Origin: Chrysemys picta bellii
Lineage: Eukaryota
DNA length: 64,000 nt
Reading direction: 5' to 3'
Assembly (NCBI RefSeq): GCF_011386835.1
Contig: NC_088806.1
Coordinates: forward strand, 1,054,001-1,118,000
Each line of letters starts with the position of its first letter. The first letter of the stretch is position 1. Position numbers and translations under genes: made by a program. Of the stretch, positions 1 to 39,300 are shown piece after piece. The notes under the pieces were generated by a model, which worked only from the letters and a program-made list of their open reading frames with translations, ran no database searches and was not told the DNA's origin.

Positions 1-29
1 TGCAGGGCCCTGAGTCCCCCAATACTCCG

Positions 30-810
30 TGACACCCCTCACTCCCGACCCGCAGCCCCCTCCTCGCCCAGCCCTGCCCCCCCCAGCTCTGCCGGTGCCC
101 CTCACTCCCGACCCGCAGCCCCTGCCAGCCCAGCCCTGCCCCCCCCCAGCTCTGGGGTGCCTCTCACTCCCGACCCGCAGCCCCCTCCTCGCCCAGCCCT
201 GCCCCCCCCCAGCTCTAGGGTGTCCCTCACTCCCGACCCACAGCCCCCTCCTCGCCCAGCCCTGCCCCCCACCCCAGCTCTGGGGTGCCCCTCACTCCCG
301 ACCCGCAGCCCCCTCCTCGCCCAGCCCTGCCCCCCCCAGCTCTGCCGGTGCCCCTCACTCCCGAGCCGCAGCCCCTGCCAGCCCAGCCCTGCCCCCCCCC
401 AGCTCTGGGGTGCCTCTCACTCCCGACCCGCAGCCCCCTCCTCGCCCAGCCTGCCCCCCCCCCAGCTCTAGGGTGTCCCTCACTCCCGACCCACAGCCCC
501 CTCCTCGCCCAGCCCTGCCCCCCCCCAGCTCTGGGGTGCCTCTCACTACCGACCCGCAGCCCCTGCCAGCCCAGCCCTGCCCCCCCCAGCTCTGCCGGTG
601 CCCCTCACTCCCAACCCGCAGCCCCTGCTATCCTGGCCCTGCCCCCCCCCCAGCTCTGCCAGTGCCCCTCACTCCCGACCCGCAGCCCCTGCCAGCCCAG
701 CCCTGCCCCCCCCAGCTCTGCCAGTGCCCCTCACTCCCGACCCGCAGCCCCCTGCTAGCCTAGCCTAGCCCAGCCCTGCCCCCCGCCCAGCTCTGCCGGT
801 GCCCCTCACT
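30..810. repeat. ~62-bp GC-rich minisatellite (CCCCTCACTCCCGACCCGCAGCCCCTGCCAGCCCAGCCCTGCCCCCCCCAGCTCTGCCGGTG), in intron 2 of the ATG16L-like gene
   Basis: About 12-13 tandem units visible; the ORFs here are just the repeat translated. The reverse complement of the same unit recurs at 13905-14236 and 37085-37600. Confidence 0.95.
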
Positions 811-857
811 CCCAATCTGCAGCCCCCAGGAGCAGAGGATTATGGTCCCAGCTTCAC

Positions 858-1541
858 CTGGATTCCTGGGTCCCGGGCTCCAGCTGAAGTTTCTCTACCA
901 ACAGCCGCTCCAGGTCCCGGCGCTCCAGGAGTTTCTCATCTGTAAATGAAGAAAGGGGAGGGGCTGGGAGCCAGGACTCCTGGGTTCTCTCCCCGGCTCT
1001 GGGAGGGGAGTGGGGGCTAGTGGTTAGAGCAGGGGGCTGGGAGCCAGGACTCCTGGGTTCTCTCCCCAGCTCTGGGAGGGGAGGGTGGCTGGTGGGTTAG
1101 ACCGCGGAGGGGGGAGGGGCTGGGAGCCAGGACTCCTGGGTTCTCTCCCCTGCTCTGGGAGGGGGACTGGAGGTCAGGTTTCTGCTATGCCCCCAACTCA
1201 TGGCCCCGCCCCCCCCGCTCGGCACCAGGTCCCACCCCCCCGCTCACGGCTCGGCACCAGGCCCCGCCCCCGCTCACGGCCCGGCACCAGGCCCCGCCCC
1301 CGCTCGGCACCAGGCCCCGCCCCCCGCTCACGGCTCTGCACCAGGCCCCGCCCCCGTTCGGCACCAGGCCGCGCCCCCGCTCACGGCTCGGCACCAGGCC
1401 CCGCCCCCGCTCGGCACCAGGCCCCGCCCCCCGCTCACGGCTCTGCACCAGGCCCTGCACCCGCCGCGTCTCGCGTTCCCGCCGCTCCAGCTCCCGGCGC
1501 ACGTGGCGCCTCCAGGCCGGGCCGGGCCCCGCCCCCTCCAT
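858..1541 (-). CDS. ATG16L-family (autophagy-related 16-like) gene, exons 1-2; the gene continues beyond the left edge
   Basis: Exon 1 1541-1439 (MEGAGPGPAWRRHVRRELERRERETRRVQGLVQS, donor C|GTGAGC) and exon 2 939-858 (acceptor ttcatttacag|, HEKLLERRDLERLLVEKLQLEPGTQESR, donor AG|GTGAAG) splice in frame. The product resembles ATG16L1 [47 protein letters not shown] and the ATG16L2 N-terminus. The paralog cannot be assigned from two exons. Confidence 0.8.
961..1165 (+). mobile_element. Tandem tRNA-derived SINE-head-like repeat (GGGCTGGGAGCCAGGACTCCTGGGTTCTCTCCCC...), about 3 units
   Basis: Units carry an A-box-like TAGTGGTTAGAGC (1019-1031) and a B-box-like GGGTTCTCTCCC. The same repeat occurs at 13447-13660 and 36625-36835. 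Confidence 0.55.
1205..1460 (-). repeat. Minisatellite made of copies of the ATG16L-like exon 1/intron 1 junction (GCCTGGTGC..AGCC|GTGAGCGGGG)
   Basis: CGCTCACGGC (the minus-strand donor GCC|GTGAGCG) occurs 5 times between 1241 and 1441; the copy at ~1325-1345 is identical to the true junction. Confidence 0.85.
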
Positions 1542-1644
1542 CGCTTCCGGGTCACGTGTGCCGCCGCCGCAATGTAGCGCCGAGAAGGGGAGGGGGCGGA
1601 GCCCGGGCCGCGCATGCGCTGAGAGCGTCGGGGCGCGCGGGGCC
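1542..1644. promoter_or_regulatory. 103-bp CpG-rich bidirectional promoter between the ATG16L-like and MED11 start codons
   Basis: Head-to-head ATGs at 1541 (-) and 1645 (+). Contains ETS/GABPA-type CTTCCGG 1544-1550, E-box GTCACGTG 1551-1558 and NRF1-type GCGCATGCGC 1610-1619. Confidence 0.7.
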
Positions 1645-3389
1645 ATGGCCACCTACAGCGTCGCCAACGAGCGGCTGCGGGTGCTGGAGGAGCTGGAGCG
1701 CGAGATCGGCGCCTCGCTGCAGAGCGCGGGTAGGGGCGGGGCCCGGCTGCAGAGCGCGGGTAGGGGCGGGGCCAGCGCCCGGGGGCGGGGCCCGGCTGCA
1801 GAGCGCGGGTAGGGGCGGGGCCAGCGCCCGGGGGCGGGGCCCGGCTGCAGAGCGCGGGTAGGGGCGGGGCCAGGGGCGTGGCTATCGGGTGGGGGCTGGC
1901 TGCAGAGCGCGGGTAGGGGCGGGGCCAGGCTGCAGAGCGCGGGTAGGGGCGGGGCCAGCGCCCGGGGGCGGGGCCCGGCTGCAGAGCGCGGGTAGGGGCG
2001 GGGCCAGGGGGCGTGGCTAACGGGCGGGGGCGGGGGCCGGATTGCAGAGCGCGGGTAGGGGCGGGGCCAGGGGCGTGGCTATCGGGTGGGGGCTGGCTGC
2101 AGAGCGCGGGTAGGGGCGGGGCCAGCGGCCGGGGGCGGGGCCCGGCTGCAGAGCGCGGGTAGGGGCGGGACCAAGGGGCGTGGCTAACGGGCGGGGGCGT
2201 GGCCTGACTGCAGAGCGCGGGTAGGGGCGGGGCCAGGGGGCGTGGCTAACGGGCGGGGGCTGGCTGCAGAGCGCGGGTAGGGGCGGGGCCAGGGGGCGTG
2301 GCTAACGGGCGGGGTGGGGCTGCAAGGGGCGTGGCTAACGGGCGGGCGGGGCCAGGGGGCAGGGGACCCTGTGTCCGGTTGTCGACCCGAACGCCCCATC
2401 GAAGGGGACCTGGCGGCGCCGGTCGGCAGCACTGACCGAGCAGGTAAATGTCCGGTCGGGGCTAAGGCAGGCGAGTCCCCACCTGTCCCGGCTCCGCATG
2501 CCCCTGGGCCGGGAACCAATGGGAGCGAGGGGGCGGGGCCCATGGAGCCTCCCACCCCCCCACCTAGGAGCCCCACCGTCCGGCCAGGCAGCCAGCCTTA
2601 GCCCCCCACTGCTTGGGAGCCCCCCAGGTTACCCCGCGCCCCAACCCCCTCCCCAGCCCTGAGCCCCCCACGGCCCCCTCCTGCCCCCCAATCCTCTCAT
2701 CCCCGGCCCCTCCCAGTGACAGTGAGTGAGGGTGGGGGAGAGGAAGCCGCGGAGGGAGGGGGAATGCAGTGATCGGGGGCGGGGCCTGGGGGAAGGGGCG
2801 GGGCCTCAGTGTTCGGTTTGGTGCAATTAGAAAGTTGGCAACACTAATCCCTTGTGGGAGGTCATGGCGATGGGGGGGGAGAGGTGCCGGGGAATCCCCT
2901 GAGGCGGGGGAGAGGTGCCGGGGTGGATCCCGCCAGCGGGTCAGGCCCGGAACAGGGGGGCGCTTTGGGACGAGGCTCCCCCTCGGGGAGGCGGGGGGGT
3001 TATCGGGGCGCCCCCTCACCCCCGTGCCCCCCCAGGGAACGTGATCCTGGAGCTGTCGAAGGAGAAGCCGAACGAGCGGTTGCTGGAGCGCCAGGCTGCC
3101 CAGTTCACCGCCTCGGTGCAGAAGGTGGAGTCGGAGCTCTCGGGGCAGATCCGGTACCTCACCCAGGTGAGGGGGCGGGGCCGGCGTGGGGGGGCGGGGC
3201 CGTGGGGCGCGCAGGCTCACCCCCCTCTCTGCCATCTCCCCACACACACAGGTGGCCACGGGGCAGCCCCACGAGGGCTCCAGCTACTCGGCCCGCAAGG
3301 GCTGCCAGATGGCGCTGAACCGCGTCGACTACGCCCGCGTCAAGCTGGGAGAGCTGGCCCGCACCTGTGAGCACACGCTGGAGCAATAG
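1645..3389 (+). CDS. MED11: Mediator subunit 11, copy 1, complete (117 aa)
   Basis: Exons 1645-1729, 3036-3166 and 3252-3389, all GT-AG and in frame. [117 protein letters not shown] closely matches human MED11. Confidence 0.98.
1717..2360 (+). repeat. MED11 intron 1 G-rich minisatellite containing about 12 copies of the exon 1 donor (CTGCAGAGCGCGG|GTAGGGGCGGGG)
   Basis: Direct inspection; unit length varies from about 26 to 63 bp. Confidence 0.9.
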
Positions 3390-25007: not shown

Positions 25008-25507
25008 NNNNNNNNNNNNNNNNNNNNNNNNNNNNNNNNNNNNNNNNNNNNNNNNNNNNNNNNNNNNNNNNNNNNNNNNNNNNNNNNNNNNNNNNNNNNN
25101 NNNNNNNNNNNNNNNNNNNNNNNNNNNNNNNNNNNNNNNNNNNNNNNNNNNNNNNNNNNNNNNNNNNNNNNNNNNNNNNNNNNNNNNNNNNNNNNNNNNN
25201 NNNNNNNNNNNNNNNNNNNNNNNNNNNNNNNNNNNNNNNNNNNNNNNNNNNNNNNNNNNNNNNNNNNNNNNNNNNNNNNNNNNNNNNNNNNNNNNNNNNN
25301 NNNNNNNNNNNNNNNNNNNNNNNNNNNNNNNNNNNNNNNNNNNNNNNNNNNNNNNNNNNNNNNNNNNNNNNNNNNNNNNNNNNNNNNNNNNNNNNNNNNN
25401 NNNNNNNNNNNNNNNNNNNNNNNNNNNNNNNNNNNNNNNNNNNNNNNNNNNNNNNNNNNNNNNNNNNNNNNNNNNNNNNNNNNNNNNNNNNNNNNNNNNN
25501 NNNNNNN
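25008..25507. other. Assembly gap (500 N)
   Basis: Run of exactly 500 N, a round placeholder size. Confidence 1.
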
Positions 25508-26758
25508 GGGACGGGGCCAGCGCCCGGGAGCGCGGCCTGGCTGCAGAGGGCGGGTAGGGGCGGGGCCAGGGGGCGTGGCTAACGGGCGGGGGGCGGGGCC
25601 TGACTGCATAGCGCGGGTAGGGACGGGGCCAGCGGCGGGTAGGGGCGGGGCCAGCGCCGGGAGCGCGGCCTGGCTGCAGAGGGCGGGTAGGGGCGGGGCC
25701 AGGGGGCGTGGCTAACGGGCGGGGGGCGTGGCCTGACTGCATAGCGCGGGTAGGGACGGGGCCAGCGGCGGGTAGGGGCGGGGCCAGCGCCGGGAGCGCG
25801 GCCTGGCTGCAGAGGGCGGGTAGGGGCGGGGCCAGGGGGCGTGGCTAACGGGCGGGGGGCGGGGCCTGGCTGCAGAGCGCGGGTAGGGGCGGGGCCAGGG
25901 GCGTGGCTAACGGGCGGGGGTCGGGCTGCAAGGGCGTGGCTAACGGGCGGGCGGGGCCAGGGGGCAGGGGACCCTGTGTCCGGTTGTCGACCCGAACGCC
26001 CCATCGAAGGGGACCTGGCGGCGCCGGTCGGCAGCACTGACCGAGCAGGTAAACGTCCGGTCGGGGCTAAGGCAGGCGAGTCCCCACCTGTCCCTGGGCC
26101 GGGAACCAATGGGAGCGAGGGGGCGGGGCCCATGAGCCTCCCACCCCCCCCACCTAGGAGCCCCACCGTCCGGCCACTTCCGGGGTGCGCGCACATCACC
26201 CCTGTCAGGCCAGGCAGCCAGCCTTACCCCCCCACTGCTTGGGAGCCCCCCGAGGTTACCCCGCGCCCCAACCCCCCTCCCCAGCCCTGAGCCCCCCACG
26301 GCCCACTCCTGCCCCCCAAACCCCTCATCCCCACCCCCTGAGCCCCCCACAACCCCCTCCTGCCCCCCAAACCCCTCATCCCCACCCCTGAGCCCCCCGC
26401 GGCCCACTCCTGTCCCCCGAACCCCCCACGGCCCCCTCCTGCCCCCCAATCCTCTCATCCCCGGCCCCTCCCAGTGACAGTGAGTGAGGGTGGGGGAGAG
26501 GAAGCCGCGGAGGAGGGGGAATGCAATGATCGGGGGCGGGGCCTGGGGAAGGGGCGGGGCCTCCGTGTTCGGTTTGGTGCCATTAGAAAGTTGGCAACAC
26601 TAATCCCTTGTGGGAGGTCATGGTGATGGGGGAGCAGTGCCGGGGTGGATCCCGCCAGCGGGTCAGGCCCGGAACAGGGGGGCGCTTTGGGACGAGGCTC
26701 CCCCTCGGGGAGGCGGGGGGGTTATCGGGGCGCCCCCTCACCCCCGTGCCCCCCCCAG

Positions 26759-27113
26759 GGAACGTGATCCTGGAGCTGTCGAAGGAGAAGCCGAACGAGC
26801 GGTTGCTGGAGCGCCAGGCCGCCCAGTTCACCGCCTCGGTGCAGAAGGTGGAGTCGGAGCTCTCGGGGCAGATCCGGTACCTCACCCAGGTGAGGGGGGC
26901 GGGGCCGGCGTGGGGGGGCGGGGCCGTGGGGCGCGCAGGCTCACCCCCCTCTCTGCCATCTCCCCACACACACAGGTGGCCACGGGGCAGCCCCACGAGG
27001 GCTCCAGCTACTCGGCCCGCAAGGGCTGCCAGATGGCGCTGAACCGCGTCGACTACGCCCGCGTCAAGCTGGGAGAGCTGGCCCGCACCTGTGAGCACAC
27101 GCTGGAGCAATAG
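26759..27113 (+). CDS. MED11: MED11 copy 2, exons 2-3 only (exon 1 missing at the gap)
   Basis: Exons 26759-26889 and 26976-27113; protein identical to copy 1, with one synonymous change noticed (GCT/GCC). Confidence 0.9.
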
Positions 27114-28651
27114 GGGGCGCCCGCCCGCCGGCCGGACACGGAGCCCACGTGGGAACACGCCAAGGACACACCAAGAACACACTAAGGACACAGGACCCGC
27201 CGGCTGGCCGCTCGCTCGCTCTGCGCGTCAGGCGGGACAGGCTCTGCTGGGGGAGCGTGGCGCCATTTGCCACAGACGTGACCCCACAGGACACATGACA
27301 ACACAGGACACACAGGATCTCAGGCTGGCGTGGGATCGACACGGCGACTGGGCCACGCTCCAACATATGGACTGGTCCCCCCCACCCCCTGGGCGTACCG
27401 GGAACATGCGGAGACCCACGCGGCTCTTGGCTTGGGGGGGGGCCCCCACCGGCGATGGGGGGGGCTGTTTTTTTTCTACTGCCTGTGTTAAATAAAAGGG
27501 GGGAAAAAACCCAAATTGCCCCACGCTGAGCACCTCGGTCAGGGGTAGGGGGGTGGATGGGGCAGGAGCTGGCAATGGGGCAGCCCCATGCCTGGAAGTG
27601 CGGGAGGAGGGAGCCCCTCACTCCTCCCCCCCCCCCCACACACACATACACATCCTGATTCCTCACCGATCCCGCCCCCGCTCCGGCCTCCGCACAGAGG
27701 AAGTGAAAATGTCTGGTAGCCGGGGGGATGGGGGGGTTCCTCTCTCCAGAGTTGCCCCCCCATCCGTCTCTGGGGGAGGGGCCCCTTGCACGCTGGGGGT
27801 TCAGGCCAGTTCCAGGTGCCCCCCCCCACAGAGAAAGCCTCGGAGAACCGCCCCCGGCACAAATACAGGGACCCCCAAAACCATGCCCACCCCCCATGAA
27901 TAACCAGCCGCAGCCTTGTACAAACATCTGTATTTAAGCTCTTCCAGGGAATAAATTAGTGGGGGCTCTGGGGGGCGGGGCAGGGCTGGCGTCTCCCCAG
28001 AGCTGGAGTACCTCGTCTGTGGTTAGCGATTAGCTTAGTGCGGGGGGGGCCTGCTCTGCGGGGCCCCCCCCCAGAGTCGGGGTCCTTCATCAAGTGGAGG
28101 GGGCGGCTGGGCATTAGACCCCCAAGCCCTCTCCCCTGCATACCATCACCCTCCACCCACCCCCCAAGAAATCAGTGGGGTGCTGGGGTCCGTTCGTGGG
28201 GGTAGCCGACAGGTGGCGCCATCCGTCAGCCCAGCTCGCAGGGGTAGTACGGCGTCCCGGTGCCTGGGGGGGGACAAAACGGGGGGGGTAAGAGCAAACC
28301 GAGGTCCCCCCGAACCCAGCATGGCCAGGACCCGCTCCGAGAGCTCCCCATGGATAGCAGGAGAGTGGGCGTGGGGGGGGGTAAATGGGGAGGGGAAACA
28401 AACCCCCACGCCCTGGGTCCGGGGGGTGCAGGGGGGCACAGATCAGGGATGGGTGGATCGGCTGTGGGGGGGGAACATGGGAGGCACACACCAGGGATGG
28501 GGGGTGGATTGGCCGTGGGGGGGAACGTGGGGGGCACAGACCAGGGACGGGGGGTGGATCGGCTATGGGGGTGCTGGGGGGCACAGAGCCAGGGGTAAAT
28601 AGCCAGTCCCCCCAGGGAAGCAGAGCCCCCTAACCCCGCTGCCCCACTTAC

Positions 28652-30627
28652 CTGGGTCTCTGTGGGGGGGGGCGGGTCCCCGGGGGGGCCGCCGGCTCCT
28701 CCGGCAGAGCACGTAGGTCAGGGCCCCCACCAGCAGCAAGGTGATGCCCAACAGCACCAGCACCGCCAGGAGGTAGGGACGGGGCTTGCCCCGGGGGGGC
28801 CCCGTCGCCTGCTCCCTCCCCCTGCCAGGGCGCCAGGCCGGGCCCCCCAACGGGGTCTGCAAGACAAAGGGGGAGGGGGTTAGAAACCAGGGGGCGGTGC
28901 AGAGATCCCCTCCCCCTTGGGGGATCACAGCTGTGAGCTCACCGGTGGTCAGGGCTTCATCTGTGGGTCTGCCGTGGGTCCGTGTGGCTCTGGAGGTCCA
29001 TCTGTGGGTTCGTGGGGCTCCAGGGGTCTGGCCGTGGGTCCGTGCGGCTCTGGGGGTCCGTCTGTGGGTTCGTGGGGCTCCGGGGGTCTGGCCGTGGGTC
29101 CGTGCAGCTCTGGGGGTCCGTCTGTGGGTTCGTGGGGCTCCGGGGGTCGGGCCGTGCTGGGCATGGGGTGGGGGCGTGCTGGTGGGGTTTGGGGCCAGCC
29201 CCCCACCCCCTTGGCGGGCATCAATCCGTCCGGCTTCTGCAGGACACGGTGAGTTACTGACCTGGCTGGGCCAGACGAGGGGGTCTGGGTCCCCCTGCCC
29301 CCCAACAGAGTCAGCTCCACCCCCCAGCACCCCACTGCCATCTCTGCCCTGCCCACCCCACCCAGCCCCCCTTCCCCCGTGTGCCCCCTGTGCCCATCAG
29401 ACCCGCCCCCCCGCCTGCTCGCGGGGAAGCTGTAGGATCCAGCCCCCTTCCCCCGTGTGCCCTATCCCCAACCCCAGAGCCGTGGATGGGGACCCCCCAA
29501 TCCCAACTCCATCAAGGGGCACCCCCTTTGTGCAGGGGGGGTGGCAGCGGTTGGGGGGAGGGGTTGGACCCACCTTTCTTCTCCCAGAGCCGGCGGAGCT
29601 CGGTCACCCAGTTGGCGCTGGCCAGCCCACAGATCTGGCCCCGGGGCAGCTCGAACCTGGGGGGCAGGGGGGAGAAGTGAGGGGGGAGGGTCCGGCCTGG
29701 CCCCACGGCAGGGCGGTGGGGAGGACCCAGGCAGGAGCGGCACCAGGGTTTTTGGCGCCCTAGGCGGGGGTCCTGCCGCGCTCCCGGTCGGCGGGGGGCA
29801 ATTCTGCGGCCGGTCCCGGAGCGAGTGAAGGACCCACCGCAGAATTGCCGCCCCCCCAAATCCTGGCGCCCTAGGCGACCGCCTAGATCACCTAAATGGA
29901 AGGCCCGGCCCGGCCCCAGGGGGGCTGTGGGGATGGGGGGGCTGGCAGGGGGAGGGGCTGGCAGGGGGGCTGTGGGGATGGGGGGCTGGCAGGGGGAGGG
30001 GCTGGCAGGGGGGCTGTGGGGATGGGGGGGGCTGCAGGCGGAGGGGCTGGCAGGGGGGCTGTGGGGATGGGGGGCTGGCAGGGGGATGCGGGGGGAGGGG
30101 GCCGGGAATTTGCAGCACCAGGCACGGGGGGGGCTCTGGGCAGCGGGGGGCAGGCGGGGGTACGTACCGGACGAGGTGCTGGCCGCAGGCCTGGTGGCCC
30201 CTCACCTTGTCGGCGAGGTCCTGGAGCCGGCTCGGGGGGCTCGTCAGCCGCAGGCATTTGCAGAGCCCGAGCGCGCCCCCCTCGTTCCCCCCGCCTGTGG
30301 GGGGAGACACTTGGGGTTAGGGGTCAGGCACTGGGCCACAGGGGGTCCCCCGGGGAGAGATCGGGGGTCCCAGCTGGAGCGGACGGGGGGTCACACCCCC
30401 CGATGGCAGCGGGGGGGCGATATGGGGGTCAGTAGGGGGGTGTTTAGCCCAGAACCTTCAGCGGGCGGGGGGCGGGTCTCAGCCTGGTGACCCCCCCAGC
30501 CCCGGGGAGCCGGGGGGGAGCTGGAGCCGGGCGCGGGGCTCAGCGGGGGGGGCTCTTACCCGGCGGGGGGGCCGCCAGCAGCAGCAGCAACAGGAGGGTC
30601 GCTCCGAGGCGGGGGGGGCGCTGCCAT
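28652..30627 (-). pseudogene. CXCL16: CXCL16 copy 2, frameshifted as assembled (possibly sequencing error)
   Basis: ATG at 30627. C8 instead of C7 in exon 1 shifts the signal peptide (MAAPPPPRSD..). The stalk exon 29265-28943 is 323 nt versus 342 nt in copy 1 (18-nt in-frame deletion plus 1-nt loss at ~28971). One extra base at ~28787 in the TM exon. Confidence 0.7.
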
Positions 30628-31826
30628 GGGGCCGGGCACGAACCGAAACTGCGCCCGCCGCGCCAGGCACCGGGAACTTTTGAGCCGCCCGGGGACTTTC
30701 CGAGCAGCGCGGGGCGGGGCGTCCTGGTCCCTGCCTGGGAACTCCCCCCCCGGCTCCCTGCAGCCCCCCCCCCGGCTCCCTGCAGCCCCCCCCCCGGCTC
30801 CAATCCCCCCCGGCTCCCTGCAAATCCCCCCGGCTCCAATCCCCCCCGCGGCTCCCTGCAGCCCCCCCCGGCTCCAACCCCCCCCCCCCCCCGGCTCCCT
30901 GCAGCCCCCCCCGACTCCAATCCCCCCCCGGCTCCAATCCCCCCCCCGGCTCCCTGCAGCCCCCCCCCGACTCCAACCCCCCCGGCTCCCTGCAGCCCCC
31001 CCCCCCCGTCTCCAACCCCCCCCCCCCCCGGCTCCCTGCAGCCCCCCCCCGACTCCAAACCCCCGGCTCGGGACAGGCCACCCCATGGCCCGTGGCCCAG
31101 GGAAGCCGGCGCCTTTCCCCGGCGGGGGACATGGCCCTGCCCCACCCGGGTCTTCGCACCTTGGCGTTCGCTGCGGGGAAACGCCGGGTTTGGGGGCGTT
31201 GTGCATCTCGCGGTTCCGTGTGAATTGGCCCTTGGGTTCGTTAAGAGCCGAATGGCTTTTGTGCCTCAGGTGGGGGCAGAAAAGTCACAGGAAAAGTGAC
31301 CCCCCCAAAAGACCCCAACGGATTTAAAGACAGTTCGGCTTTGCAGCCCGTGGGAACGTGGACGGGGGATCCGGGAGGGGAAACGGGATCTTGGTCTCGG
31401 TCGCTTGTTGGCTTTGCTCTAAATAGTCCCGGGGGGGGCTGGAGGGGGGGCTGTTGAGTTGTTTTTGTTGCATGTTCTCGCTTTTGTTTCCTGGGGCTTT
31501 TCTGTGACTAACACGGCTGCAGAAGTGGCTATTGGCCAGCTGGGGAGAGCGGCGAGAAAACGCGCCCTTGGGTGCATGGGGTTTGGAGCTCGGCAGCTGG
31601 GCCCCCCAATCTTCTCTCTAGCCCCCCTCTTTCCCCTCCCCCGGGAAGGGGCTGGAACCTGTTTCCCCCACAGCCTGACCGACTCCCTGCCTGGTGCGTG
31701 TGGGGGCAAAGAGACACCCTCATGGGGGCGAAGGGGGCTGGGGTTGGAGGCAGATTAGCAGAGACATTCTGGGGCGGGGTGGGAGCCAAAGGGGAGTTCG
31801 CAGGCCGGGTTGGTTTAAAGCGATTT

Positions 31827-33840
31827 AAATCAGAGAATCAGAGAACGGGAAGGGACCTCGTGAGGTCTCTAGACCCGACCCCTGCACTCAAGTCAGGACT
31901 AGGTATTGACCAGCCCTGACGGGTGTTTGTCCAGCGGGCTCTTAAAAATCCCCAACGATGGAGATTCTACAACCTCCCTGGGCAATTTATTCCAGTGCTT
32001 AACCCCCCTGACAGTTAGGAAGTTTTTTTCCTAATGTCCAACCTAAACTGCCCTTGCTGCAATTTAAGCTCCTCGCTTCTTGTCCTGTCCTCAGAGGTTA
32101 AGAACAACAATTTTTCTCCCTCCTCCTCATAACAACCTTTTATGTACTTGAAAACTGTGATCATGTCCCCTCTCAGTCTTCTCTTCTCCAGACTAAACAA
32201 ACCCACGTTTTTCAATCTTCTCCCATCGCTCATGTTTTCTAGACCTTTCATCTTTTTTGTTGCTCTTCTCTGGACTCTCTCCAATTTCTCCACATCTTTC
32301 CTGAAATGTGGGGCCCAGAACTGGACACAATACTCCACTTGAGGCCTAATCAGCGCCGAGTAGAGCAGAAGAATTACTTCTCGTGTCTTGCTTACAACAC
32401 TCCTGCTAATACATCCCAGAATGTTGTTTGCTTTTTTTGCAACAGCGTCACACTGTTGACTCATATTTATCTCGTGATCCTCTCTGACCCCCGGATCCCT
32501 TTCCGCAGGACTCCTTCCTAGGCCGTCATTTCCCATTTTGTATGTGTGCAACTGATTGTTCCCTCCTCAATGGAGAACTTTGCATGTGTCTGTGAGGAAG
32601 TGGGACTGTTCTTAATGTTTCCTTTGAATTCTGTGTGGGTGCCTCAGTTTCCCCTATGCAGTTCTTAAGTCTCTAGGGGGTGAGATTGTTGCAGAGCAAA
32701 GGGCCGGTGTACATAAATGGCCGACTCTGTCTCCTGGCAAGTGATGTCCGGGGCCCTTCCCCCCTGCAAGAGGATGCTAAAGGTGTGGGAGAACAAAGGA
32801 ATCAGGTGATCTCCTGGCCCGGGAAAGGAACTCAGCATAGAAGGAGGGGCTGGAGAGTTTCAGTTTGGAGCTGGCTGGGGATGGGAAGTGAGGGCAGATG
32901 GGGGTGTCTGGCTCACTGCCCCCCAAAATGGACTCAGCTGAGGGGTCCTGTTCTCTGTATGTACAAGCTCTGTTTTAGACCGTGTTCCTGTCATCTAATA
33001 AACCTCTGTTTTACTGGCTGGCTGAGAGTCACGTCTGACTGCGAAGTGGGGGGTGCAGAACCCTCTGGCTTCCCCAGGACCCCGCCGGGGCGGACTCGCT
33101 GTGGGAAGCGCACGGAGGGGCAGATGCTGAATGCTCCCAGGAGAGACCCAGGAGGTGAAGCCGTGTGAGCGTCTTGCCCTGAAGACAGTCTGCTCCGAGG
33201 GAGAGGAGGCTCCCCAAAGTCCTGACTGGCTTTGTGGGGAGCAGTTCCAGAGCATCGCCCGGGGACTCCGTGACAGTGTCCTTATGGAATTTCATCCTAT
33301 TTACTTCAGACCATTTCTCCGGTTTGTCCAGATCATTATGAATTTTAATCCTATCCTTCAAAGCACTTGTAACCCCTCCCAGCTTGGTATCGTCCACAAA
33401 CTTTATAAGTGTCCTCTCTAGGCCATTATCTAAATCATTGATGAAGATATTGAACAGAACCAGACCCAGAACCGATCTCTGCGGGACTCCACTCGTTATG
33501 CCTTTCCGGCCTGACTGTGAACCACCGATAACTACTCTCTGGGGACAGTTTTCCAACCAGTTTTGTGCCCACCTTATAGCAGCTCCATCTAGGTTGTATT
33601 TCCCTAGTTTGTTTATGAGAAGGTCATGCGAGACAGTATCAAAAGTCTTACTAAAGTCAAGATAGACCACATCTACCGCTTCCCCCCAGCCACAAGGCTT
33701 GTTACCCTGTCAAAGAAAGCTATCGGGTTGGTTTGACATGATTTGTTCTGGACAAATCCATGCTGACTGTTACTCGTCAGCTATTATCTTCAAGATGTCT
33801 GCAAACTGATTGCTTAATTATTTGCTCCGTTAGCTTTCTG
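31827..33840 (-). mobile_element. CR1 fragment, copy 2, with the same solo LTR at 32591-33275 (TSD GTGTC)
   Basis: ORF 33029-33670 gives MVYLDFSKTFDTVSHDLLINKLGKY..FVDDTKLGG (RT); same nested structure as copy 1. Confidence 0.93.
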
Positions 33841-34242
33841 GGGGCTGCAAAATCCGGCTTGAAAACCTCAACGTTCCTTGTGGTTTGCATTTTTCGTTCT
33901 CTTCCTGGAGAGCGGAGCCTTTGTCCCGTCCGGGAGCCGGGCCCACGCAGTAATCTCTACTTTGGTGCCGCTTTGGGCTGGCCCAGGGGCTTGGCCAGAG
34001 CGAAGCACGTTTATTGATGTGGCTGTAGATTTCTCCAGATGAACATTGCCGGGCTTGGACGAGCTTAGAAGATCTTCTGGCTCGGATACAGCCCTTCCTG
34101 TCTGGAGATCTCGAAGCACTTTATAAAGCAGGTGGGTCTCGTTAGCTCCACTTCACAGACAGGGAAACCGAGGCACGGAATGGCCCGTGAAAGCACACCT
34201 GTGTGCTCTACCCACTATCATTTTTTTTACCTTGTGACCCCC

Positions 34243-35357
34243 TGCGACATTATTGAGAGAATCTGTGTCCATCTGTTGCAACCACTGTTATATATTTGCA
34301 GCAGGTGCTGTACAAAGGTTGTCATGCGAGGTGTTTGTGGAGAGGTTGTGGTGTGCTGGGGGTGATTGTGCTGGGTGGGTGTGTATTGGTTTTGTAGTTG
34401 ACGGTAGGAATGTTGGCTCTGCGCTCGTATCTCAAGGTGTGTGACTCTAAGTACCCACAGTGAAGCACTGGGGTGGCTTCTTGAGAAAGGAATTTGCAAG
34501 TTAAGGGCCCAATCCAGAAACACTTAACGGACAATGGATCTTGGGAGACTCCAATCCAGATAAGAAATCTACCTGGGGGTGTTCAGGATGGCGTGTGGGC
34601 AGTGGCTACCACCTGTAAAAACTGAGTCACGCCTGGACATGTGACTGGCCCATGTGACTCCAAACTCCATTTTGCTGTAATTTTCCACGGTAAGTACAAA
34701 GAAGTGTTCTTACACCTGGAGGAGACTATAAAAGGCTGATGCCTCATCTCCATCTTGTCTTCAATCCTGCTTCTCACCTCTGGAGGGACTTTGCTACAAA
34801 CGGAAGCTCTGAACAAAGGACTGAGGACCCATCCCGGCTGGGGATGTATTCCAGAGACTTGATTTGAACCTGCAGTTTATTCTATCACTGCTACGAGCCT
34901 GAACCAAGAACTTTGCCATTACTGTATGTAACTGATTCCATGTAACCAGTTCTAGCTCTCAGTGATATCTTTTTTCTTTTTATGAATAAACCTTTCAATT
35001 GTAGATTCTAAGGATTGGCTTGTGGGGAAGATCTGACTTGTCTATCGACCTGGGTCTGGGGCTTGGTCCTTTGGGATCAGGAGAACCTTTTCCTTTTACT
35101 GGGGTATTGGTTTTCATAACCATTCGTCACCATAACGAGTGGCGCTGGTGGTGATACTGGGAAACTGGAGTGTCTGAGGGAATTGCTGGTGTGACGTGTG
35201 GTTCGCCAGTGGGGTGAGACCAAAGTCCTCTCTGTCTGGCTGGTTTGGTGCTGGGTGTGCAAAGGACCCGAGCCTTGGGCGGGGTCTGCCCTGCTCTGAG
35301 CGATTTGTCCTTGGATTGAGGCTCTCAGTTGGGTCCACCAGAACCAGCATCATTACC
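34243..35357 (+). mobile_element. Solo LTR-like element, copy 2
   Basis: Counterpart of 11082-12178. Confidence 0.65.
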
Positions 35358-36338
35358 GCCCCCTTACCCCTGTCTGTGACCCCCAATCCCCAGAGCAGGC
35401 CCGGGAGGGAGGGATGCGGACAGGGGTGAAGGGACCCAGGCCTCCATTGTGCTGGGGGGTGGGGGGAGTTTGTCCAAACCCGGTTGCGTTTAAAACGAAG
35501 CGAGGAACGGAAGCATTGTGGTTTCCTGTCGCGCTGGGCCAGACGCTGCGAGCTCTGGAAAGCTGCCAAGGCCGGGTTAGGAGCCATGGGCATAGGACAG
35601 AGGTTGTTAGCAGCAGCAGGGGCCTGCAGCAGGGAAACTGAGGCACACAAACCAGTGAGAGTCACATGCCACACAACATGGGGAACCCCCCCCCCCCCGG
35701 TCACATGGCATCCTGCGTGCCTCGGACTCAGCCGATCCCCCCGCCCGGGCGCCGGGTCAGGGGTGGGAGAGGAATGTGCAGCTTTTGGAAACTTTCCCAT
35801 GACCTGTCCCCGGAGGAATGCCACGGCCTGGGGGATGCGGGGGAGACCTGCCAGCTGGCCGGGCAGCGACCATTAATGCCCGGAAGCCGTGGGGAGCAGG
35901 AACTGGAGGCCGAGTGCCTGGGGGCCAGGCTGGGAGTCTGTCCTGCGACTCTGAACATTACGATAGAGGCAGATTTTTAAAAAACACTTAAACCCCCTGT
36001 CCCGGACCCCCATATTCCCCCCCCCACGTGCTCTCTCTCGGCTCCACACAGCCCTGGGGGGGTCTCCCTGCAATGCGACGGCCCCTCTTGGGGACCTGCT
36101 GTCTCTCCCAGGCCCCAGCCCTGCCTGGGCCCGCACCTCTGAGCCCCCCACAGCCGGGCCCCCTTGCTCTGGGGCGGGGGACATGCGGGGCGAAGAAGCC
36201 CCCCGGGGCCAGGGATGTATGCGCATGGCCCTTTAAATATCACTGTGATGTCATCGCTGGCGCTACTGTGACATCACGGCGGGCAGCTCCTCCCCCTGTG
36301 CCCACCCACCCGCCTCTCCCGCTGCTGGGGGGCAGCCA

Positions 36339-39300
36339 ATGGCAGCGTGGCGACTGCTGGAGCTCCTCCTCCTTGGGGCCACGGGCATCTGGGCGACAGG
36401 TGGGTGCCGGGGGGGATGGACAGGTGCCCCTGCCCCAATCATACCCTCCCCCCCTGCCCTGGAAGGGGGACGGGTCCTTCCCTACAGTCGATGTCACAGG
36501 GCAACCCCTCCCCCTCCCAGCCTTTGATGGCGTGTGATGTCACGGAGGCCTCTGATGTCACACATGTGGCGCTGTGATGTCATCCAGTGAACGGGAACAG
36601 GGGGGTGGAGATGTGGCATGTGAAGGGCTGGGAGCCCGGACGCCTGGGTTCTCTCCCCGGCGCTGGGAGGGGAGTGGGGGTTGGTGGGTCAGAGCAGGGG
36701 GGGCTGGGAGCCAGGACTCCTGGGTTCTCTCCCCGGCTCTGGGAGGGGAGTGGGGGTTGGTGGGTCAGAGCAAAGGGGCTGGTAGCCAGGACTCCTGGGT
36801 TCTCTCCCCGGCTCTGGGAGGGGAGTGGGGGCTGGCAGGGAGAGGGGGGGCAAATGTCTCTAACGGGGGGCTCTGTCTCCCCAGGCTGTGGCTTCCGGCC
36901 GGGATACGACAGCCCCAGCCTCTCCCCCGCACCCCGCATCATCGGGGGGCAGAAAAGCCGCCCTGGGGAATGGCCCTGGGTTGTGAGTCTCCAGACCCAA
37001 GGGCACCACTTCTGTGGGGGGGAGCGTCATACACTCCTGGTGGGTGCTGAGCGCAGCCCACTGCTTCCACGACACCCGGTAAGGGGGTTGCGGGTCGGGA
37101 GTGAGGGGCACTGGCAGAGCTGGGGGGGGGGGCAGGGCTGGGCTGGCAGGGGCTGCGGGTCGGGAGTGAGGGGCACCGGCAGAGCTGGGGGGGGCAGGGC
37201 CGGACTGGCAGGGGCTGCGGGTCGGGAGTGAGGGGCACCGGCAGAGCTGGGGGACAGGGCTGGGCTGGCAGGGGCTGCGGGTCGGGAGTGAGGGGCACCG
37301 GCAGAGCTGGGGGGCAGGACTGAGATAGCAGGGGGCTGCGGGTCGGGAGTGAGGGGCACCGGCAGAGCTGGGGGGCAGGGCTGGGCCAGCAGGGGCTGCG
37401 GGTCGGGAGTGAGGGGCACCGGCAGAGCTGGGGGGGCAGGGCTGGGCTGGCAGGGGCTGCGGGTCGGGAGTGAGGGGCACCGGCAGAGCTGGGGGGGGCA
37501 GGGCCGGGCTAGCAGGGGCTGTGGGTCGGAAGTGAGGGGCACCGGCAGAGCTGGGGGGCAGGGCTGGGCCAGCGGGGGCTGTGGGTCGGGAGTGAGGGGT
37601 GCCATCCCTGTGCCCAGGCCCCAGGACGTGACGGTGGCGGCCGGCAGCGTGACCCTGGGCATGGGCGGCGTCACCCGGCGGGTTCGACGGATCCTGTCCC
37701 ACCCCAGCTACAGCCGCAGCACCTACGACTCGGACCTGGCCCTGCTGCTGCTGAGCCGCCCCCTGCCCCCGGGCCGGGGTCTCGGCCTCGTCTGCCTCCC
37801 CGGGGAGCCGGACGACGAGGACGACGGGCAGTGGGGCAGCTGCTATGTGGCCGGGTGGGGCACCACGGAGTACGGTGAGCGGGGCCACCTGGTGGGCCTG
37901 AGCCGGGGGGAGCAGGGGGCGGGGCTGGGAGGGGGCTGGGGAGGAGGGGGTCTCTCCAGGGGTGTCTGGCTGGGGGGGGTCAGGCCGGAGGGGGTGGGGC
38001 TGATGGCTGGGGGGGCCCATGGCTGGGGGGGGTCTCTCTGGGGGTGGTCTGGCCGGGGCTGCACCGTCGTCTCTCGCAGGGCAGGAGACGGTGTCGGGAG
38101 TGCTGCAGGGGGCTGGCAGGGCCCATGGCTGGGGGGAATCTGGTCGCGGGGGGGTCCGGCAGGGGGTTCCGGCAGGGGGGTCCGGCCGGGCTGCAGCGTC
38201 GTCTCTCGCAGGGCAGGAGACGGTGTCGGGGGCGCTGCGGGAGGCTGGCGTGCGGATCGTCGATTGGCTGCGCTGCATGTGGTGGATGGGGGCCCTGACC
38301 CAAAACATGGTCTGCGCCGGGCACGAGGAGGGCGGCCGGGACGCCTGCCAGGTGGGGACCCCCCCAGCCCCTCCCCCGCCCAGGCCCCCCCATTCCTCCC
38401 AGCCCCTCCCCCAAACCCCACCTCTGCCCCACCCCAGGGCGCAGGCCCCTCCCACAGGGCCCCAAACTCCCCCCCGTCATCCCCCCGACACCCTCATGCC
38501 CTGGACAGGGGACCCCCCGTGGTTCGTCCTTCGCTCCCCCGTCTGCCCCGTTCCCGCGGCGGCTTCTGGAGGTTCCCCTCCATGCCGGGGTCGCGCGTTC
38601 GCTGCCTCCCTCCGCGTCTGTCCTTCCTCTGTCACTTCCTTCGCTTCCTCCGCGTCTGTTCTTCCTCCTTCACTTCCTCCCTCCTCCGCTTCCTCCGTTG
38701 CATCCTCCTTCCTTTGCTTCCTCCGTATCTGTCCTTCCTCCGTCACTTCCTCCTTCCTCCACTTCCTTCATTCACTGCCTCCTCTGCGTCTTTCCTCCTT
38801 CCTCCGTCGCTTCCTCCTTCCTCTGCTTCCTCCGTCGCTTCCTTCCTTCCTCCACTTCCTTCAATCGCTGCCTCCGCCGCGTCTGTCCTCCCTCAGTCGC
38901 TTCCTTCCTTCCTCCACTTCCTTCAATCGCTGCCTCCGCCGCGTCTGTCCTTCCTCCGTCGCTTCCTCCTTCGCTTCCTCCCTCCTCCGCTTCCTCCGCC
39001 GATTCCTTCCTTCCTCTGTCAATTCCTCCGTCGCTTCCTCCTTCGCTTCCTTCCTCCGTCGCTTCCTCCGTCGCTTCCTTCCTCCGTCGCTTCCTTCCTC
39101 CGTCGCTTCCTTCCTTCCTCCACTTCCTTCAATCGCTGCCTCCTCCATGTCTGTCCTTCCTCCGTCGCTTCCTTTATTCGCTGACTCCTCCGCATCACTC
39201 CTCCTTCCTCCTCCACTTCCTTCCTCCCTCGTTTCCTTCCCCCCTTGCTTCCTCCGGCGCCTCCTTCGCTTCATCCACGTCTCTCCTTCTCCGCTTCCTT

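What the first reader, a model, noticed from the sequence alone, without database searches (positions are those of the whole stretch)
858..1541. ATG16L-family gene head-to-head with MED11: candidate additional ohnolog lost in mammals
Seen: two spliceable exons encode WRRHVRRELERRERE, fitting the ATG5-interacting motif W-x3-I/V-x3-L-x2-R-x2-[QE], then HEKLLERRDLERLLVEKLQ, which parallels ATG16L1 [19 protein letters not shown]. The intron falls at the matching phase-1 position. Known: human 17p13.2 has ARRB2, not an ATG16L gene, upstream of MED11; ATG16L1 lies beside SAG (2q37) and ATG16L2 lies in the ARRB1 region (11q13). Inference: an ATG16L gene in the ARRB2-MED11 neighbourhood fits a third whole-genome-duplication paralog retained in this lineage, which would mean an uncharacterised ATG12-ATG5-ATG16 complex variant.
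Basis: partly seen in the sequence, partly recalled or inferred. Interest (0 to 1): 0.78.

Follow-up and report, generated by a model that had tools for sequence, protein, structure and literature searches.

The report
Short ATG16L gene without WD40 in reptiles
The two exons are the start of a real, transcribed painted-turtle gene for a short autophagy protein of the ATG16L family that lacks the usual WD40 propeller, sits between ARRB2 and MED11 in turtles and lizards, and has not been described in the papers searched.

Summary
Minus-strand exons 1541-1439 and 939-858 are joined in transcript contigs of 4 of 4 runs from 4 studies. The joined 61 residues match the ATG16L1 N-terminus (E=1.5e-7). 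MED11 starts 103 bp away on the other strand. The window is Chrysemys picta bellii (identical to GCA_011386835.2).

The gene is not a full ATG16L. NCBI models in 7 turtle, 2 alligator and about 14 squamate species give 216-333 residues: an ATG5-binding helix, one long coiled-coil helix and a disordered tail, with no WD40. In all five loci fetched it lies antisense between the 3' end of ARRB2 and MED11, with no room for a propeller.

Six intron positions and phases match fish ATG16L1, which itself lies next to an arrestin gene. All RAB33B-contact residues of ATG16L1 are invariant. The WIPI2b salt-bridge residues E226 and E230 are replaced.

The third-ohnolog idea is plausible (about 0.55), supported by arrestin-linked synteny and a very long stem branch. 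It is unproven: the trees are inconclusive, ATG16L2 could not be fetched, and no member was found outside non-avian reptiles.

The gene is annotated automatically as "autophagy-related protein 16-like". I found no paper on it.

The parts
1439..1541 (-). Coding part of exon 1 of the short ATG16L-like gene. The conserved start ATG is at 1541. It encodes 34 codons plus 1 base, including the ATG5-binding helix anchors W10, V14, L18 and R21.
   Evidence: Identical to the Chrysemys picta bellii models P0013 and P0123. The conserved start is shared with Malaclemys, Caretta, Carettochelys and Emydura.
1542..1730 (-). 5' leader and shared divergent promoter region. An upstream in-frame ATG at 1646-1644 is used by the Chrysemys Gnomon models, but the resulting extension is not conserved in other turtles.
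   Evidence: Transcript contigs run unbroken from 1439 to 1730 across both gene starts. This could mean overlapping divergent transcripts, or an unstranded assembly merging the two. The extension differs in Gopherus and Pelodiscus.
940..1438 (-). Intron 1 (499 nt, GT..AG, phase 1). It begins inside a GC-rich minisatellite (1202-1464) whose unit copies the exon-1 end and its donor site. It also holds a 73-bp dispersed-repeat array (954-1164).
   Evidence: The same minisatellite read-through appears in Malaclemys.
858..939 (-). Exon 2 (82 nt, starts in phase 1 and ends in phase 2), encoding (H)EKLLERRDLERLLVEKLQLEPGTQES(R).
   Evidence: Exon length and phases are the same in Malaclemys and Carettochelys.
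1..857 (-). Start of intron 2. A 63-bp tandem array (35-827) continues off the window. Exon 3 lies about 7.5 kb further on in the same assembly.
   Evidence: L005 is identical to the window and places exon 3 at L005 18290. The loose end beyond 857 in the transcript contigs reads ...ESRAPLELASLQL, which is exon 3.
1645..1730 (+). MED11 exon 1, the head-to-head neighbour. Its ATG is 103 bp from the short gene's ATG.
   Evidence: Contigs join position 1730 to MED11 exon 2. The Pfam Med11 label is given to the neighbouring gene in all five loci.

Best explanation
Window 1541-858 (minus strand) holds the first two coding exons of a real, expressed gene for a short ATG16L-family protein, called ATG16S here. 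It is about 250 residues long: an N-terminal ATG5-binding helix, one long coiled-coil helix and a disordered acidic, serine-rich tail, with no WD40 propeller.

The gene has been inherited vertically in turtles, crocodilians and squamates since at least their common ancestor. In the turtles and lizards whose loci were fetched it always lies antisense between ARRB2 and MED11.

The most likely origin is a third copy from the vertebrate genome duplications that also gave ATG16L1 (beside an arrestin gene in fish) and ATG16L2. This copy then lost its 3' half.

The most likely function, which is inferred, has three parts. The protein dimerises through its coiled coil. It binds ATG12-ATG5 through its N-terminal helix. 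It is recruited by RAB33B-GTP, whose contact residues are invariant. It cannot use ATG16L1's first WIPI2b site or any WD40-dependent route. It would therefore either direct ATG8 lipidation to RAB33B membranes or modulate ATG16L1 by competing with it or pairing with it.

Confidence by sub-claim: real gene and its architecture about 0.95; ohnolog origin about 0.55; binding of ATG5 and RAB33B about 0.5.
For: - Splicing and expression: the 1439/939 joint is present in 4 of 4 runs from 4 studies, and the contigs continue into exon 3.
- Homology: the joined 61 residues match ATG16L1 at E=1.5e-7. Full-length P0003 matches human ATG16L1 residues 11-226 at E=4e-10. The family profile hits ATG16L1 proteins at E down to 1e-26.
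- Gene structure: six intron positions and phases are shared with fish ATG16L1 (1, 2, 0, 2, 2, 2). Two exons have identical length, 74 and 66 nt. One intron has been lost.
- Family: 216-333-residue models exist in 7 turtle, 2 alligator and about 14 squamate species.
- Tree: the family is monophyletic at 100/100, and its internal branching follows the species tree.
- Selection: dN/dS between Malaclemys and Carettochelys is 0.22 (YN00) to 0.51 (NG86).
- Architecture: AlphaFold2 gives helix 8-54, helix 62-200 at pLDDT 93-99, and a disordered tail.
- No room for WD40: the gene spans 2.9-5.9 kb in four loci and 10.6 kb in Chrysemys, where one intron is expanded by repeats. The arrestin gene follows tail-to-tail within 1.3-2.9 kb.
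- Neighbour identity: the arrestin's last exon scores best against beta-arrestin-2. PELP1 lies beyond it in the gecko.
- Paralogous synteny: fish ATG16L1 is followed by an arrestin gene.
- Stem branch: 2.36 changes per site, against about 0.9 for the whole roughly 280-My crown.
- Binding sites: ATG16L1 R193, W194, E197, K198, E201, A202, R204 and N206 are invariant in 19 of 19 members. E226 is R in 13 of 19 and E230 is A or G in 17 of 19. Site definitions come from PMC7395093 and PMC9977175.
- ATG5 motif: anchors W, V, L and R are present in 18 of 19 members.
Against: - No binding or dimerisation was tested.
- The last AFIM position (Q/E) is T in this turtle and varies across the family.
- Pfam ATG16 scores stay below the gathering cut-off, 21-32 bits against 33.7.
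- Evolution is fast: 43% identity between turtle and lizard, against 85% for ATG16L1 between bird and lizard. Constraint is therefore only moderate.
- Ohnolog origin needs losses in mammals and probably other lineages. No member was found in birds, amphibians or fish, although the search was limited by shared words and by length.
- AU tests reject neither placement.
- ATG16L2 was never compared.
- ATG16S and ARRB2 are tail-to-tail, whereas fish ATG16L1 and its arrestin are in tandem.
- In the Chrysemys assembly itself, off-window exons 4 and 5 carry +1 and +2 homopolymer differences from Malaclemys. These put about 40 coiled-coil codons out of frame. If real, the copy in this species may be impaired.
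Confidence: 0.55

Rival explanations
1. ATG16S arose in the sauropsid stem (or a little earlier) by a DNA-level partial duplication of the 5' half of ATG16L1. The copy landed between ARRB2 and MED11, took over MED11's divergent promoter and then evolved very fast.
For: Members were found only in turtles, crocodilians and squamates. The AU test does not reject a clade of ATG16S plus sauropsid ATG16L1 (p=0.115). The RAB33B site is shared with ATG16L1 and is reported as not conserved in ATG16L2 (PMC7395093). Shared introns rule out retroposition but fit a genomic copy.
Against: The copy would have had to land by chance next to ARRB2, a paralogue of the arrestin that flanks ATG16L1 in fish (PMC5795056). 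The stem of 2.36 changes per site would have to build up in a few tens of millions of years, many times the family's later rate. The held-together tree is 3.9 log-likelihood units worse.
Confidence: 0.3
2. ATG16S is the reptile counterpart of ATG16L2, relocated and truncated, rather than a third gene.
For: ATG16L2 could not be fetched, so this was never tested directly. Like ATG16L2, ATG16S lacks the WIPI2b E226/E230 pair (PMC7395093 reports that ATG16L2 does not bind WIPI2b).
Against: ATG16S keeps every RAB33B-contact residue, while ATG16L2 is reported not to conserve that site or bind RAB33B (PMC7395093). It lies in the ARRB2 block, not the ARRB1 block where mammalian ATG16L2 lies (the latter is from my own knowledge). 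A 2026 survey that included Gopherus and Anolis treats ATG16L1 and ATG16L2 as a pair dating to jawed vertebrates and reports no sauropsid loss (PMC13020874). From memory, and untested here, reptiles and chicken have an annotated full-length ATG16L2.
Confidence: 0.05
3. The locus is a decaying or non-coding by-product of MED11's bidirectional CpG-island promoter. It is transcribed and spliced, but the protein is not functional, at least in Chrysemys picta.
For: Evolution is fast. NG86 dN/dS is 0.5-0.7 in some pairs. Models show many alternative 3' ends. There is a +1/+2 frame disturbance over about 40 codons in the Chrysemys assembly. Pfam scores are below threshold.
Against: Open reading frames with the same exon structure are kept in more than 20 species across about 280 My. 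Eight RAB33B-site residues and four ATG5-motif anchors are invariant or nearly so. Deletions in the coiled coil are 14 and 7 residues, which are whole heptads. YN00 dN/dS is 0.22. The two indels lie in C and G runs and add up to 3, which fits assembly error as well as a real change.
Confidence: 0.08

Closest known systems
ATG16L1 (vertebrate autophagy-related 16-like 1)
   Same: The N-terminal ATG5-binding helix and the coiled coil are collinear over ATG16L1 residues 11-226. Six intron positions and phases are shared, and two exons have equal length. All RAB33B-contact residues are identical. There is an arrestin gene as next neighbour.
   Different: ATG16S has no linker and no WD40 propeller. 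Identity is 23-29%. The WIPI2b site-1 residues E226, E230 and Q217 are replaced. The coiled coil has 14- or 7-residue deletions and one intron is lost. ATG16S evolves about ten times faster and lies in a different locus.
ATG16L2
   Same: It is a divergent paralogue that is dispensable for canonical autophagy, does not bind WIPI2b, and is reported to act through heterodimers with ATG16L1 (PMC7395093; bioRxiv 10.64898/2026.06.01.729256). This gives a precedent for a modulating paralogue.
   Different: ATG16L2 keeps the WD40 propeller and is reported to have lost RAB33B binding. ATG16S shows the reverse pattern.
Yeast Atg16
   Same: The architecture is the same: an Atg5-binding N-terminal helix plus a dimeric coiled coil, with no WD40.
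   Different: Yeast Atg16 is the ancestral fungal form, about 150 residues long. ATG16S is a secondarily shortened vertebrate paralogue that exists beside full-length ATG16L1. No sequence comparison was run here.
Engineered ATG16L1 truncations without the WD40 domain
   Same: They have the same domain content, the ATG5-binding helix plus the coiled coil. These alleles are known to separate canonical autophagy from WD40-dependent ATG8 conjugation to single membranes.
   Different: Those constructs keep E226 and E230 and therefore WIPI2b binding. ATG16S naturally carries R and A/G at those positions, which resembles the binding-dead E226R and E230R mutants (PMC9977175).
TECPR1 AIR region
   Same: It carries the same ATG5-interacting motif type (PMC4453027).
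   Different: It is an unrelated protein outside the motif. ATG16S continues as an ATG16-type helix and coiled coil.

Membership tests
ATG16 / ATG16L family | Significant sequence similarity to the ATG16L1 N-terminus and coiled coil | tested here: met
   The window's joined exons match at E=1.5e-7. Orthologue P0003 matches at E=4e-10 over ATG16L1 11-226. The family profile hits ATG16L1 at E down to 1e-26 in a 5.8-billion-sequence database.
ATG16 / ATG16L family | Pfam ATG16 (PF08614) above the gathering score | tested here: not met
   ATG16 is the best family for 7 of 8 members scanned, but at 21-32 bits against a cut-off of 33.7. The 61-residue window peptide gave no hit.
ATG16 / ATG16L family | ATG5-interacting motif anchors W-x3-I/V-x3-L-x2-R on an N-terminal helix | tested here: met
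   W10, V14, L18 and R21 are in the window. They are present in 18 of 19 family members. The helix 8-54 is predicted at pLDDT about 90.
ATG16 / ATG16L family | Last motif position, x3-Q/E (PMC4453027) | tested here: not met
   The window has T25. Across the family: T 7, A 7, and Q, E, G, V one each, with one gap.
ATG16 / ATG16L family | Long coiled-coil domain after the N-terminal helix | tested here: met
   A single helix 62-200 is predicted at pLDDT 93-99. Indels relative to ATG16L1 are 14 and 7 residues. Dimer formation itself cannot be tested with these tools.
ATG16 / ATG16L family | Gene structure shared with ATG16L1 | tested here: met
   Intron phases 1, 2, 0, 2, 2, 2 fall at homologous codons. 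The 74-nt and 66-nt exons are identical in length to those of Caranx ATG16L1.
Metazoan ATG16L (full-length type) | C-terminal seven-bladed WD40 propeller | tested here: not met
   All models are 216-333 residues and none has a WD40 Pfam hit. The stop codon is followed within 1.3-2.9 kb by the 3' end of ARRB2.
Metazoan ATG16L (full-length type) | WIPI2b-binding site 1 (Q217, L224, E226, A227, E230) | tested here: not met
   L224 is kept. Q217 is V in 18 of 19, E226 is R in 13 of 19, and E230 is A or G in 17 of 19. E226R and E230R abolish binding in ATG16L1 (PMC9977175).
Metazoan ATG16L (full-length type) | RAB33B-binding site (R193, K198, A202, N206 and W194, E197, E201) | tested here: met
   All are invariant in 19 of 19 members. 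The site is defined in PMC7395093. Binding itself was not tested.
ATG16 / ATG16L family | Physical binding to ATG12-ATG5 and E3-like activity | not testable with these tools
   This needs pull-down and lipidation assays.
Third 2R ohnolog of ATG16L1/ATG16L2 | Lies in a paralogous block, linked to an arrestin paralogue | tested here: met
   ATG16S lies next to ARRB2 in Malaclemys, Carettochelys, Elgaria, Heteronotia and Chrysemys. ATG16L1 lies next to an arrestin in Caranx. The four arrestins form a paralogon (PMC5795056).
Third 2R ohnolog of ATG16L1/ATG16L2 | Branches outside the bony-vertebrate ATG16L1 clade and outside ATG16L2 | tested here: inconclusive
   The attachment point within ATG16L1 is unresolved. 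AU p=0.115 for ATG16S plus sauropsid ATG16L1 as a clade, and p=0.377 for tetrapod ATG16L1 as a clade. There were no ATG16L2 or outgroup sequences.
Third 2R ohnolog of ATG16L1/ATG16L2 | Orthologues in other jawed-vertebrate classes | tested here: inconclusive
   None were found in birds, mammals, amphibians or fish. These searches depend on shared 5-residue words, a length band of 0.55-1.75 times the query, or a 34-residue query.

The most novel reading that the evidence does not exclude
ATG16S is a third whole-genome-duplication copy of ATG16L that survives only in non-avian reptiles as a natural WD40-less ATG16. It would form an ATG12-ATG5-ATG16S complex (or ATG16S-ATG16L1 heterodimers) recruited by RAB33B rather than by WIPI2 or the V-ATPase. 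That would be a separate, membrane-specific branch of ATG8 lipidation that mammals have lost.
Probability: 0.3. Interest if true: 0.75.

Novelty: new variant of a known kind. Interest (0 to 1): 0.6.

Why it matters
ATG16L1 decides where ATG8/LC3 is attached to membranes. Its separate modules, which bind WIPI2, FIP200, RAB33B and (through WD40) the V-ATPase, have so far been taken apart only with engineered truncations.

Reptiles appear to carry a natural version with the ATG5 and RAB33B modules only, kept for about 280 million years. It offers three things:
- an evolutionary test of which modules can stand alone;
- a possible new regulator of the shared lipidation machinery, by analogy with the ATG16L1-ATG16L2 heterodimer;
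- a correction to the view that vertebrates have just an ATG16L1/ATG16L2 pair (PMC13020874).

If the ohnolog origin holds, it also adds a marker to the arrestin paralogon.

Tried and rejected
I then sent exon 1 by reference and did not send the joined peptide anywhere afterwards.
- Pfam on the 61 residues gave nothing.
- The look-up of encoding contigs failed for proteins that are not the longest isoform. Longest isoforms worked.
- The single-sequence word search found turtles only. Alignment queries were needed to reach alligator and squamates.
- To bring in ATG16L1 I added a 53-residue ATG16L1 stretch, printed, to the query alignment. That recruited ATG16L1 but not ATG16L2, so no tree with ATG16L2 or invertebrate outgroups could be built.
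- Tree attachment and AU tests were inconclusive.
- YN00 failed on the saturated turtle-lizard pairs.
- My exon threading produced false micro-exons for Heteronotia and for the 3' end of P0008. Only the first five Heteronotia exons are trustworthy, and they were not used.
- One literature search on ATG16L2 in reptiles was too loose to be useful. Searches for 'ATG16L3', for arrestin plus ATG16L synteny and for the NCBI product name found no paper on this gene.
- Human protein hits (P0054-56, P0066-67) were left out of all alignments and trees. No human DNA was fetched.
- I did not run fold search, because a model made of two long helices gives meaningless structural matches.
Full report
**1. 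What is in the window**

On the minus strand an ATG at 1541 opens 34 codons plus one base (MEGAGPGPAWRRHVRRELERRERETRRVQGLVQS), ending at 1439 before a GT. After an AG at 941-940, bases 939-858 continue the frame as (H)EKLLERRDLERLLVEKLQLEPGTQES, again followed by GT. On the plus strand MED11 exon 1 starts at 1645, 103 bp from the other ATG.

Exon 1 alone gives ATG16L1 as the three best PDB matches, but weakly (E=0.06). The two exons joined give E=1.5e-7 over ATG16L1 residues 8-60.

**2. Transcription and splicing**

Contigs of four probable RNA runs from four studies all carry the joint 1439/939, which skips 499 bases with GT..AG on the minus strand. They run on for 359-815 nt beyond 857. The first letters beyond 857 translate in frame as ...ESRAPLELASLQL.

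The same contigs run unbroken through 1439-1730 and into MED11 exon 2. Either the two divergent transcripts overlap at their 5' ends, or the unstranded assembly merged them. Contigs cannot give strand or expression level.

**3. Which genome and which gene**

A full scan of 1.84 billion proteins with exon 1 returned two turtle proteins that NCBI names autophagy-related protein 16-like. The Chrysemys picta bellii models P0013 and P0123 contain the window's exons exactly. The locus of P0123 (GCA_011386835.2, CM062333.1) is identical to the window over all 11,646 shared bases. The window is therefore painted turtle.

In that assembly:
- Exon 3 lies 7.5 kb to the left of the window, beyond a long 63-bp tandem array.
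- The gene ends about 10 kb from its start.
- ARRB2's last exon (..DDDIVFEDFARLRLKG..) follows tail-to-tail about 2.9 kb further on.

**4. The family**

Word searches with a single protein and then with alignments found 216-333-residue proteins in these groups:
- Seven turtle genera: Chrysemys, Malaclemys, Gopherus, Caretta, Pelodiscus, Carettochelys, and the side-necked Emydura.
- Two alligator species.
- About fourteen squamates: geckos, lacertids, an amphisbaenian, anguid, cordylid, agamids and anoles.

None has a WD40 hit. The Pfam ATG16 domain is the best family for 7 of 8 members scanned, but stays under threshold at 21-32 bits against 33.7.

In Malaclemys, Carettochelys, Elgaria and Heteronotia the gene spans only 2.9-5.9 kb. 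Its neighbours are the same each time. MED11 is head-to-head on one side. An arrestin gene is tail-to-tail on the other, 1.3-1.6 kb away in three loci and 0.8 kb away in the gecko. CXCL16, a trypsin-like gene and ZMYND15 lie beyond MED11, and PELP1 lies beyond the arrestin. The arrestin's last exon scores best against beta-arrestin-2. There is no room for a propeller.

**5. Homology at the level of gene structure**

I threaded proteins onto genomic DNA. The Caranx (fish) ATG16L1 gene has coding exons of 100 (counting the ATG), 94, 106, 74, 70, 182, 66 and 87 nt, with end phases 1, 2, 0, 2, 0, 2, 2, 2. Malaclemys ATG16S has exons of 103, 82, 70, 74, 210, 66 and 49 nt, with end phases 1, 2, 0, 2, 2, 2.

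- The 74-nt and 66-nt exons have identical length.
- ATG16L1 exons 5 and 6 are fused in ATG16S, so one intron has been lost.

ATG16S is therefore a genomic paralogue, not a retrocopy. Relative to ATG16L1, the coiled coil is 14 residues shorter in turtles and 7 shorter in squamates, which are whole heptads.

**6. Architecture and sites**

AlphaFold2 on an 18-sequence alignment gives helix 8-54, a short break, one helix 62-200 (pLDDT 93-99) and a disordered tail. That is the N-terminal half of ATG16L1.

- ATG5 motif (W-x3-I-x3-L-x2-R-x3-Q/E, PMC4453027): W, V, L and R are present in 18 of 19 members. The last position varies and is T in this turtle.
- RAB33B site of ATG16L1 (E186-N206; K198A, A202W and N206K abolish binding, PMC7395093): R193, W194, E197, K198, E201, A202, R204 and N206 are invariant in all 19 members. 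This is the most conserved block of the family.
- WIPI2b site 1: the salt-bridge residues E226 and E230 are R (13 of 19) and A or G (17 of 19), and Q217 is V. E226R and E230R abolish binding in ATG16L1 (PMC9977175).
- Tail: a conserved serine-rich, acidic motif (..ELVTSE..SCEE..) lies in the exon that corresponds by position to ATG16L1's DDDIEV...ETSP exon. Its role is unknown.

**7. Constraint**

The family tree follows the species tree: alligator with turtles, and geckos basal among squamates, with 100/100 support for family monophyly. Open frames and exon structure are kept in more than 20 species.

dN/dS between Malaclemys and Carettochelys is 0.22 (YN00) to 0.51 (NG86), with GC3 of 0.8-0.9. 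The protein changes fast: 43% identity between turtle and lizard, against 85% for ATG16L1 between bird and lizard. Constraint is therefore moderate and concentrated on the binding sites.

**8. Origin**

Two things favour an old, block-duplication origin.

- Synteny. ATG16S sits beside ARRB2. In a teleost, ATG16L1 is followed within a few kb by an arrestin gene whose tested exon scores highest against S-arrestin. The four jawed-vertebrate arrestins lie in one paralogon (PMC5795056). A late copy of ATG16L1 would have had to land next to an arrestin paralogue by chance.
- Branch length. The branch joining ATG16S to ATG16L1 is 2.36 changes per site. That compares with about 0.9 for the whole roughly 280-million-year crown of ATG16S and about 0.4 for fish-to-tetrapod ATG16L1. 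This is hard to fit into the short interval before the sauropsid crown. The strong shift in GC and amino-acid composition may inflate the figure.

Several things count against it, or leave it open.

- The attachment point inside ATG16L1 is unresolved. AU tests reject neither a clade of ATG16S with sauropsid ATG16L1 (p=0.115) nor tetrapod ATG16L1 monophyly (p=0.377).
- No ATG16L2 or invertebrate sequence could be fetched.
- No member was found in birds, mammals, amphibians or fish, though the searches could easily miss divergent or longer relatives.
- Gene orientation relative to the arrestin differs between the two blocks.

I put the ohnolog origin at about 0.55, a sauropsid-stage duplicate of ATG16L1 at about 0.3, and a relocated ATG16L2 at about 0.05. 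The last is low because ATG16L2 is reported to have lost the RAB33B site that ATG16S keeps (PMC7395093).

**9. How it most likely works (inferred)**

ATG16S is probably a coiled-coil dimer that binds ATG12-ATG5 at its N-terminus and RAB33B-GTP near the end of the coil. It has neither the first WIPI2b site nor any WD40-dependent recruitment. Two outcomes are possible:
- It targets ATG8 lipidation to RAB33B-positive (Golgi-derived) membranes.
- It tunes ATG16L1, either by competing for ATG5 and RAB33B or by heterodimerising with it. A 2026 preprint reports heterodimerisation for ATG16L2 (bioRxiv 10.64898/2026.06.01.729256).

None of these interactions was tested.

**10. Novelty**

NCBI's pipeline already names the gene in many reptiles, so the sequence is not new. 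I found no paper about it:
- 'ATG16L3' gives no hit.
- No paper combines arrestin, ATG16L1, ATG16L2 and synteny.
- Of the 68 papers holding the NCBI product name, the ten listed all use it for ATG16L1.
- A 2026 survey of ATG gene duplication that included Gopherus and Anolis treats ATG16 as a pair. Its methods filtered by conserved domains and removed some short sequences (PMC13020874).

It is best described as a new variant of a known kind.

**11. Caveat for this species**

Compared with Malaclemys, the Chrysemys assembly has one extra C in a C-run in exon 4 and two extra G in a G-run in exon 5. Both exons are off the window. Together these put about 40 coiled-coil codons out of frame in the Gnomon models. 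This could be assembly error or a real compensated frameshift. I could not lay reads there.

**12. Limits kept**

Human protein hits were left out of the alignments and trees. No human DNA was fetched. No N stretch was filled.

Noticed in passing
window 1202-1464 and 1716-2352: Both divergent first introns begin inside GC-rich minisatellites whose units copy the end of their own exon 1 together with the splice donor. The ATG16S unit is ..GGCCTGGTGC(A/C)GAGCCGTGAGCGGGG.. and the MED11 unit is ..GCTGCAGAGCGCGGGTAGGGGCGGGGCC... This creates rows of decoy donor sites. Transcript contigs use only the first donor, at 1439 and at 1730. Malaclemys has the same ATG16S array.
   Followed up: partly
L005 18488 and 18645 (Chrysemys, off the window to the left): There is a +1 C difference in exon 4 and a +2 G difference in exon 5 relative to Malaclemys, both in homopolymer runs. 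About 40 coiled-coil codons are read out of frame in all Chrysemys Gnomon models. This is either an assembly error or a real compensated frameshift.
   Followed up: partly
window 2906-24927 versus 26628-45157, gap at 25008-25507: A block of about 22 kb is present twice at about 88-97% identity. It holds the 3' end of MED11, CXCL16 and the trypsin-like gene. The two copies are separated by the window's only N gap. This could be a recent segmental duplication or a falsely duplicated haplotype around an assembly gap. The ATG16S exons and MED11 exon 1 are not in the second copy.
   Followed up: partly
window 35-827, continuing to L005 about 18250: Intron 2 of ATG16S is swollen to about 7.5 kb in Chrysemys by a 63-bp tandem array. 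The same intron is only about 300 bp in Malaclemys.
   Followed up: partly
window 54360-57870: A long tandem array with many self-matches at about 83% identity and offsets of roughly 35-70 bp and multiples. It was not examined further.
   Followed up: no
L002 1-2052, L003 1-137: Gene models next to CXCL16 carry a trypsin domain. In Carettochelys the trypsin domain is fused in one model with zf-MYND/MSS51_C (ZMYND15).
   Followed up: no
L006 10001-24129: The GenBank annotation splits Caranx melampygus ATG16L1 into two gene models, of 415 and 165 residues.
   Followed up: no
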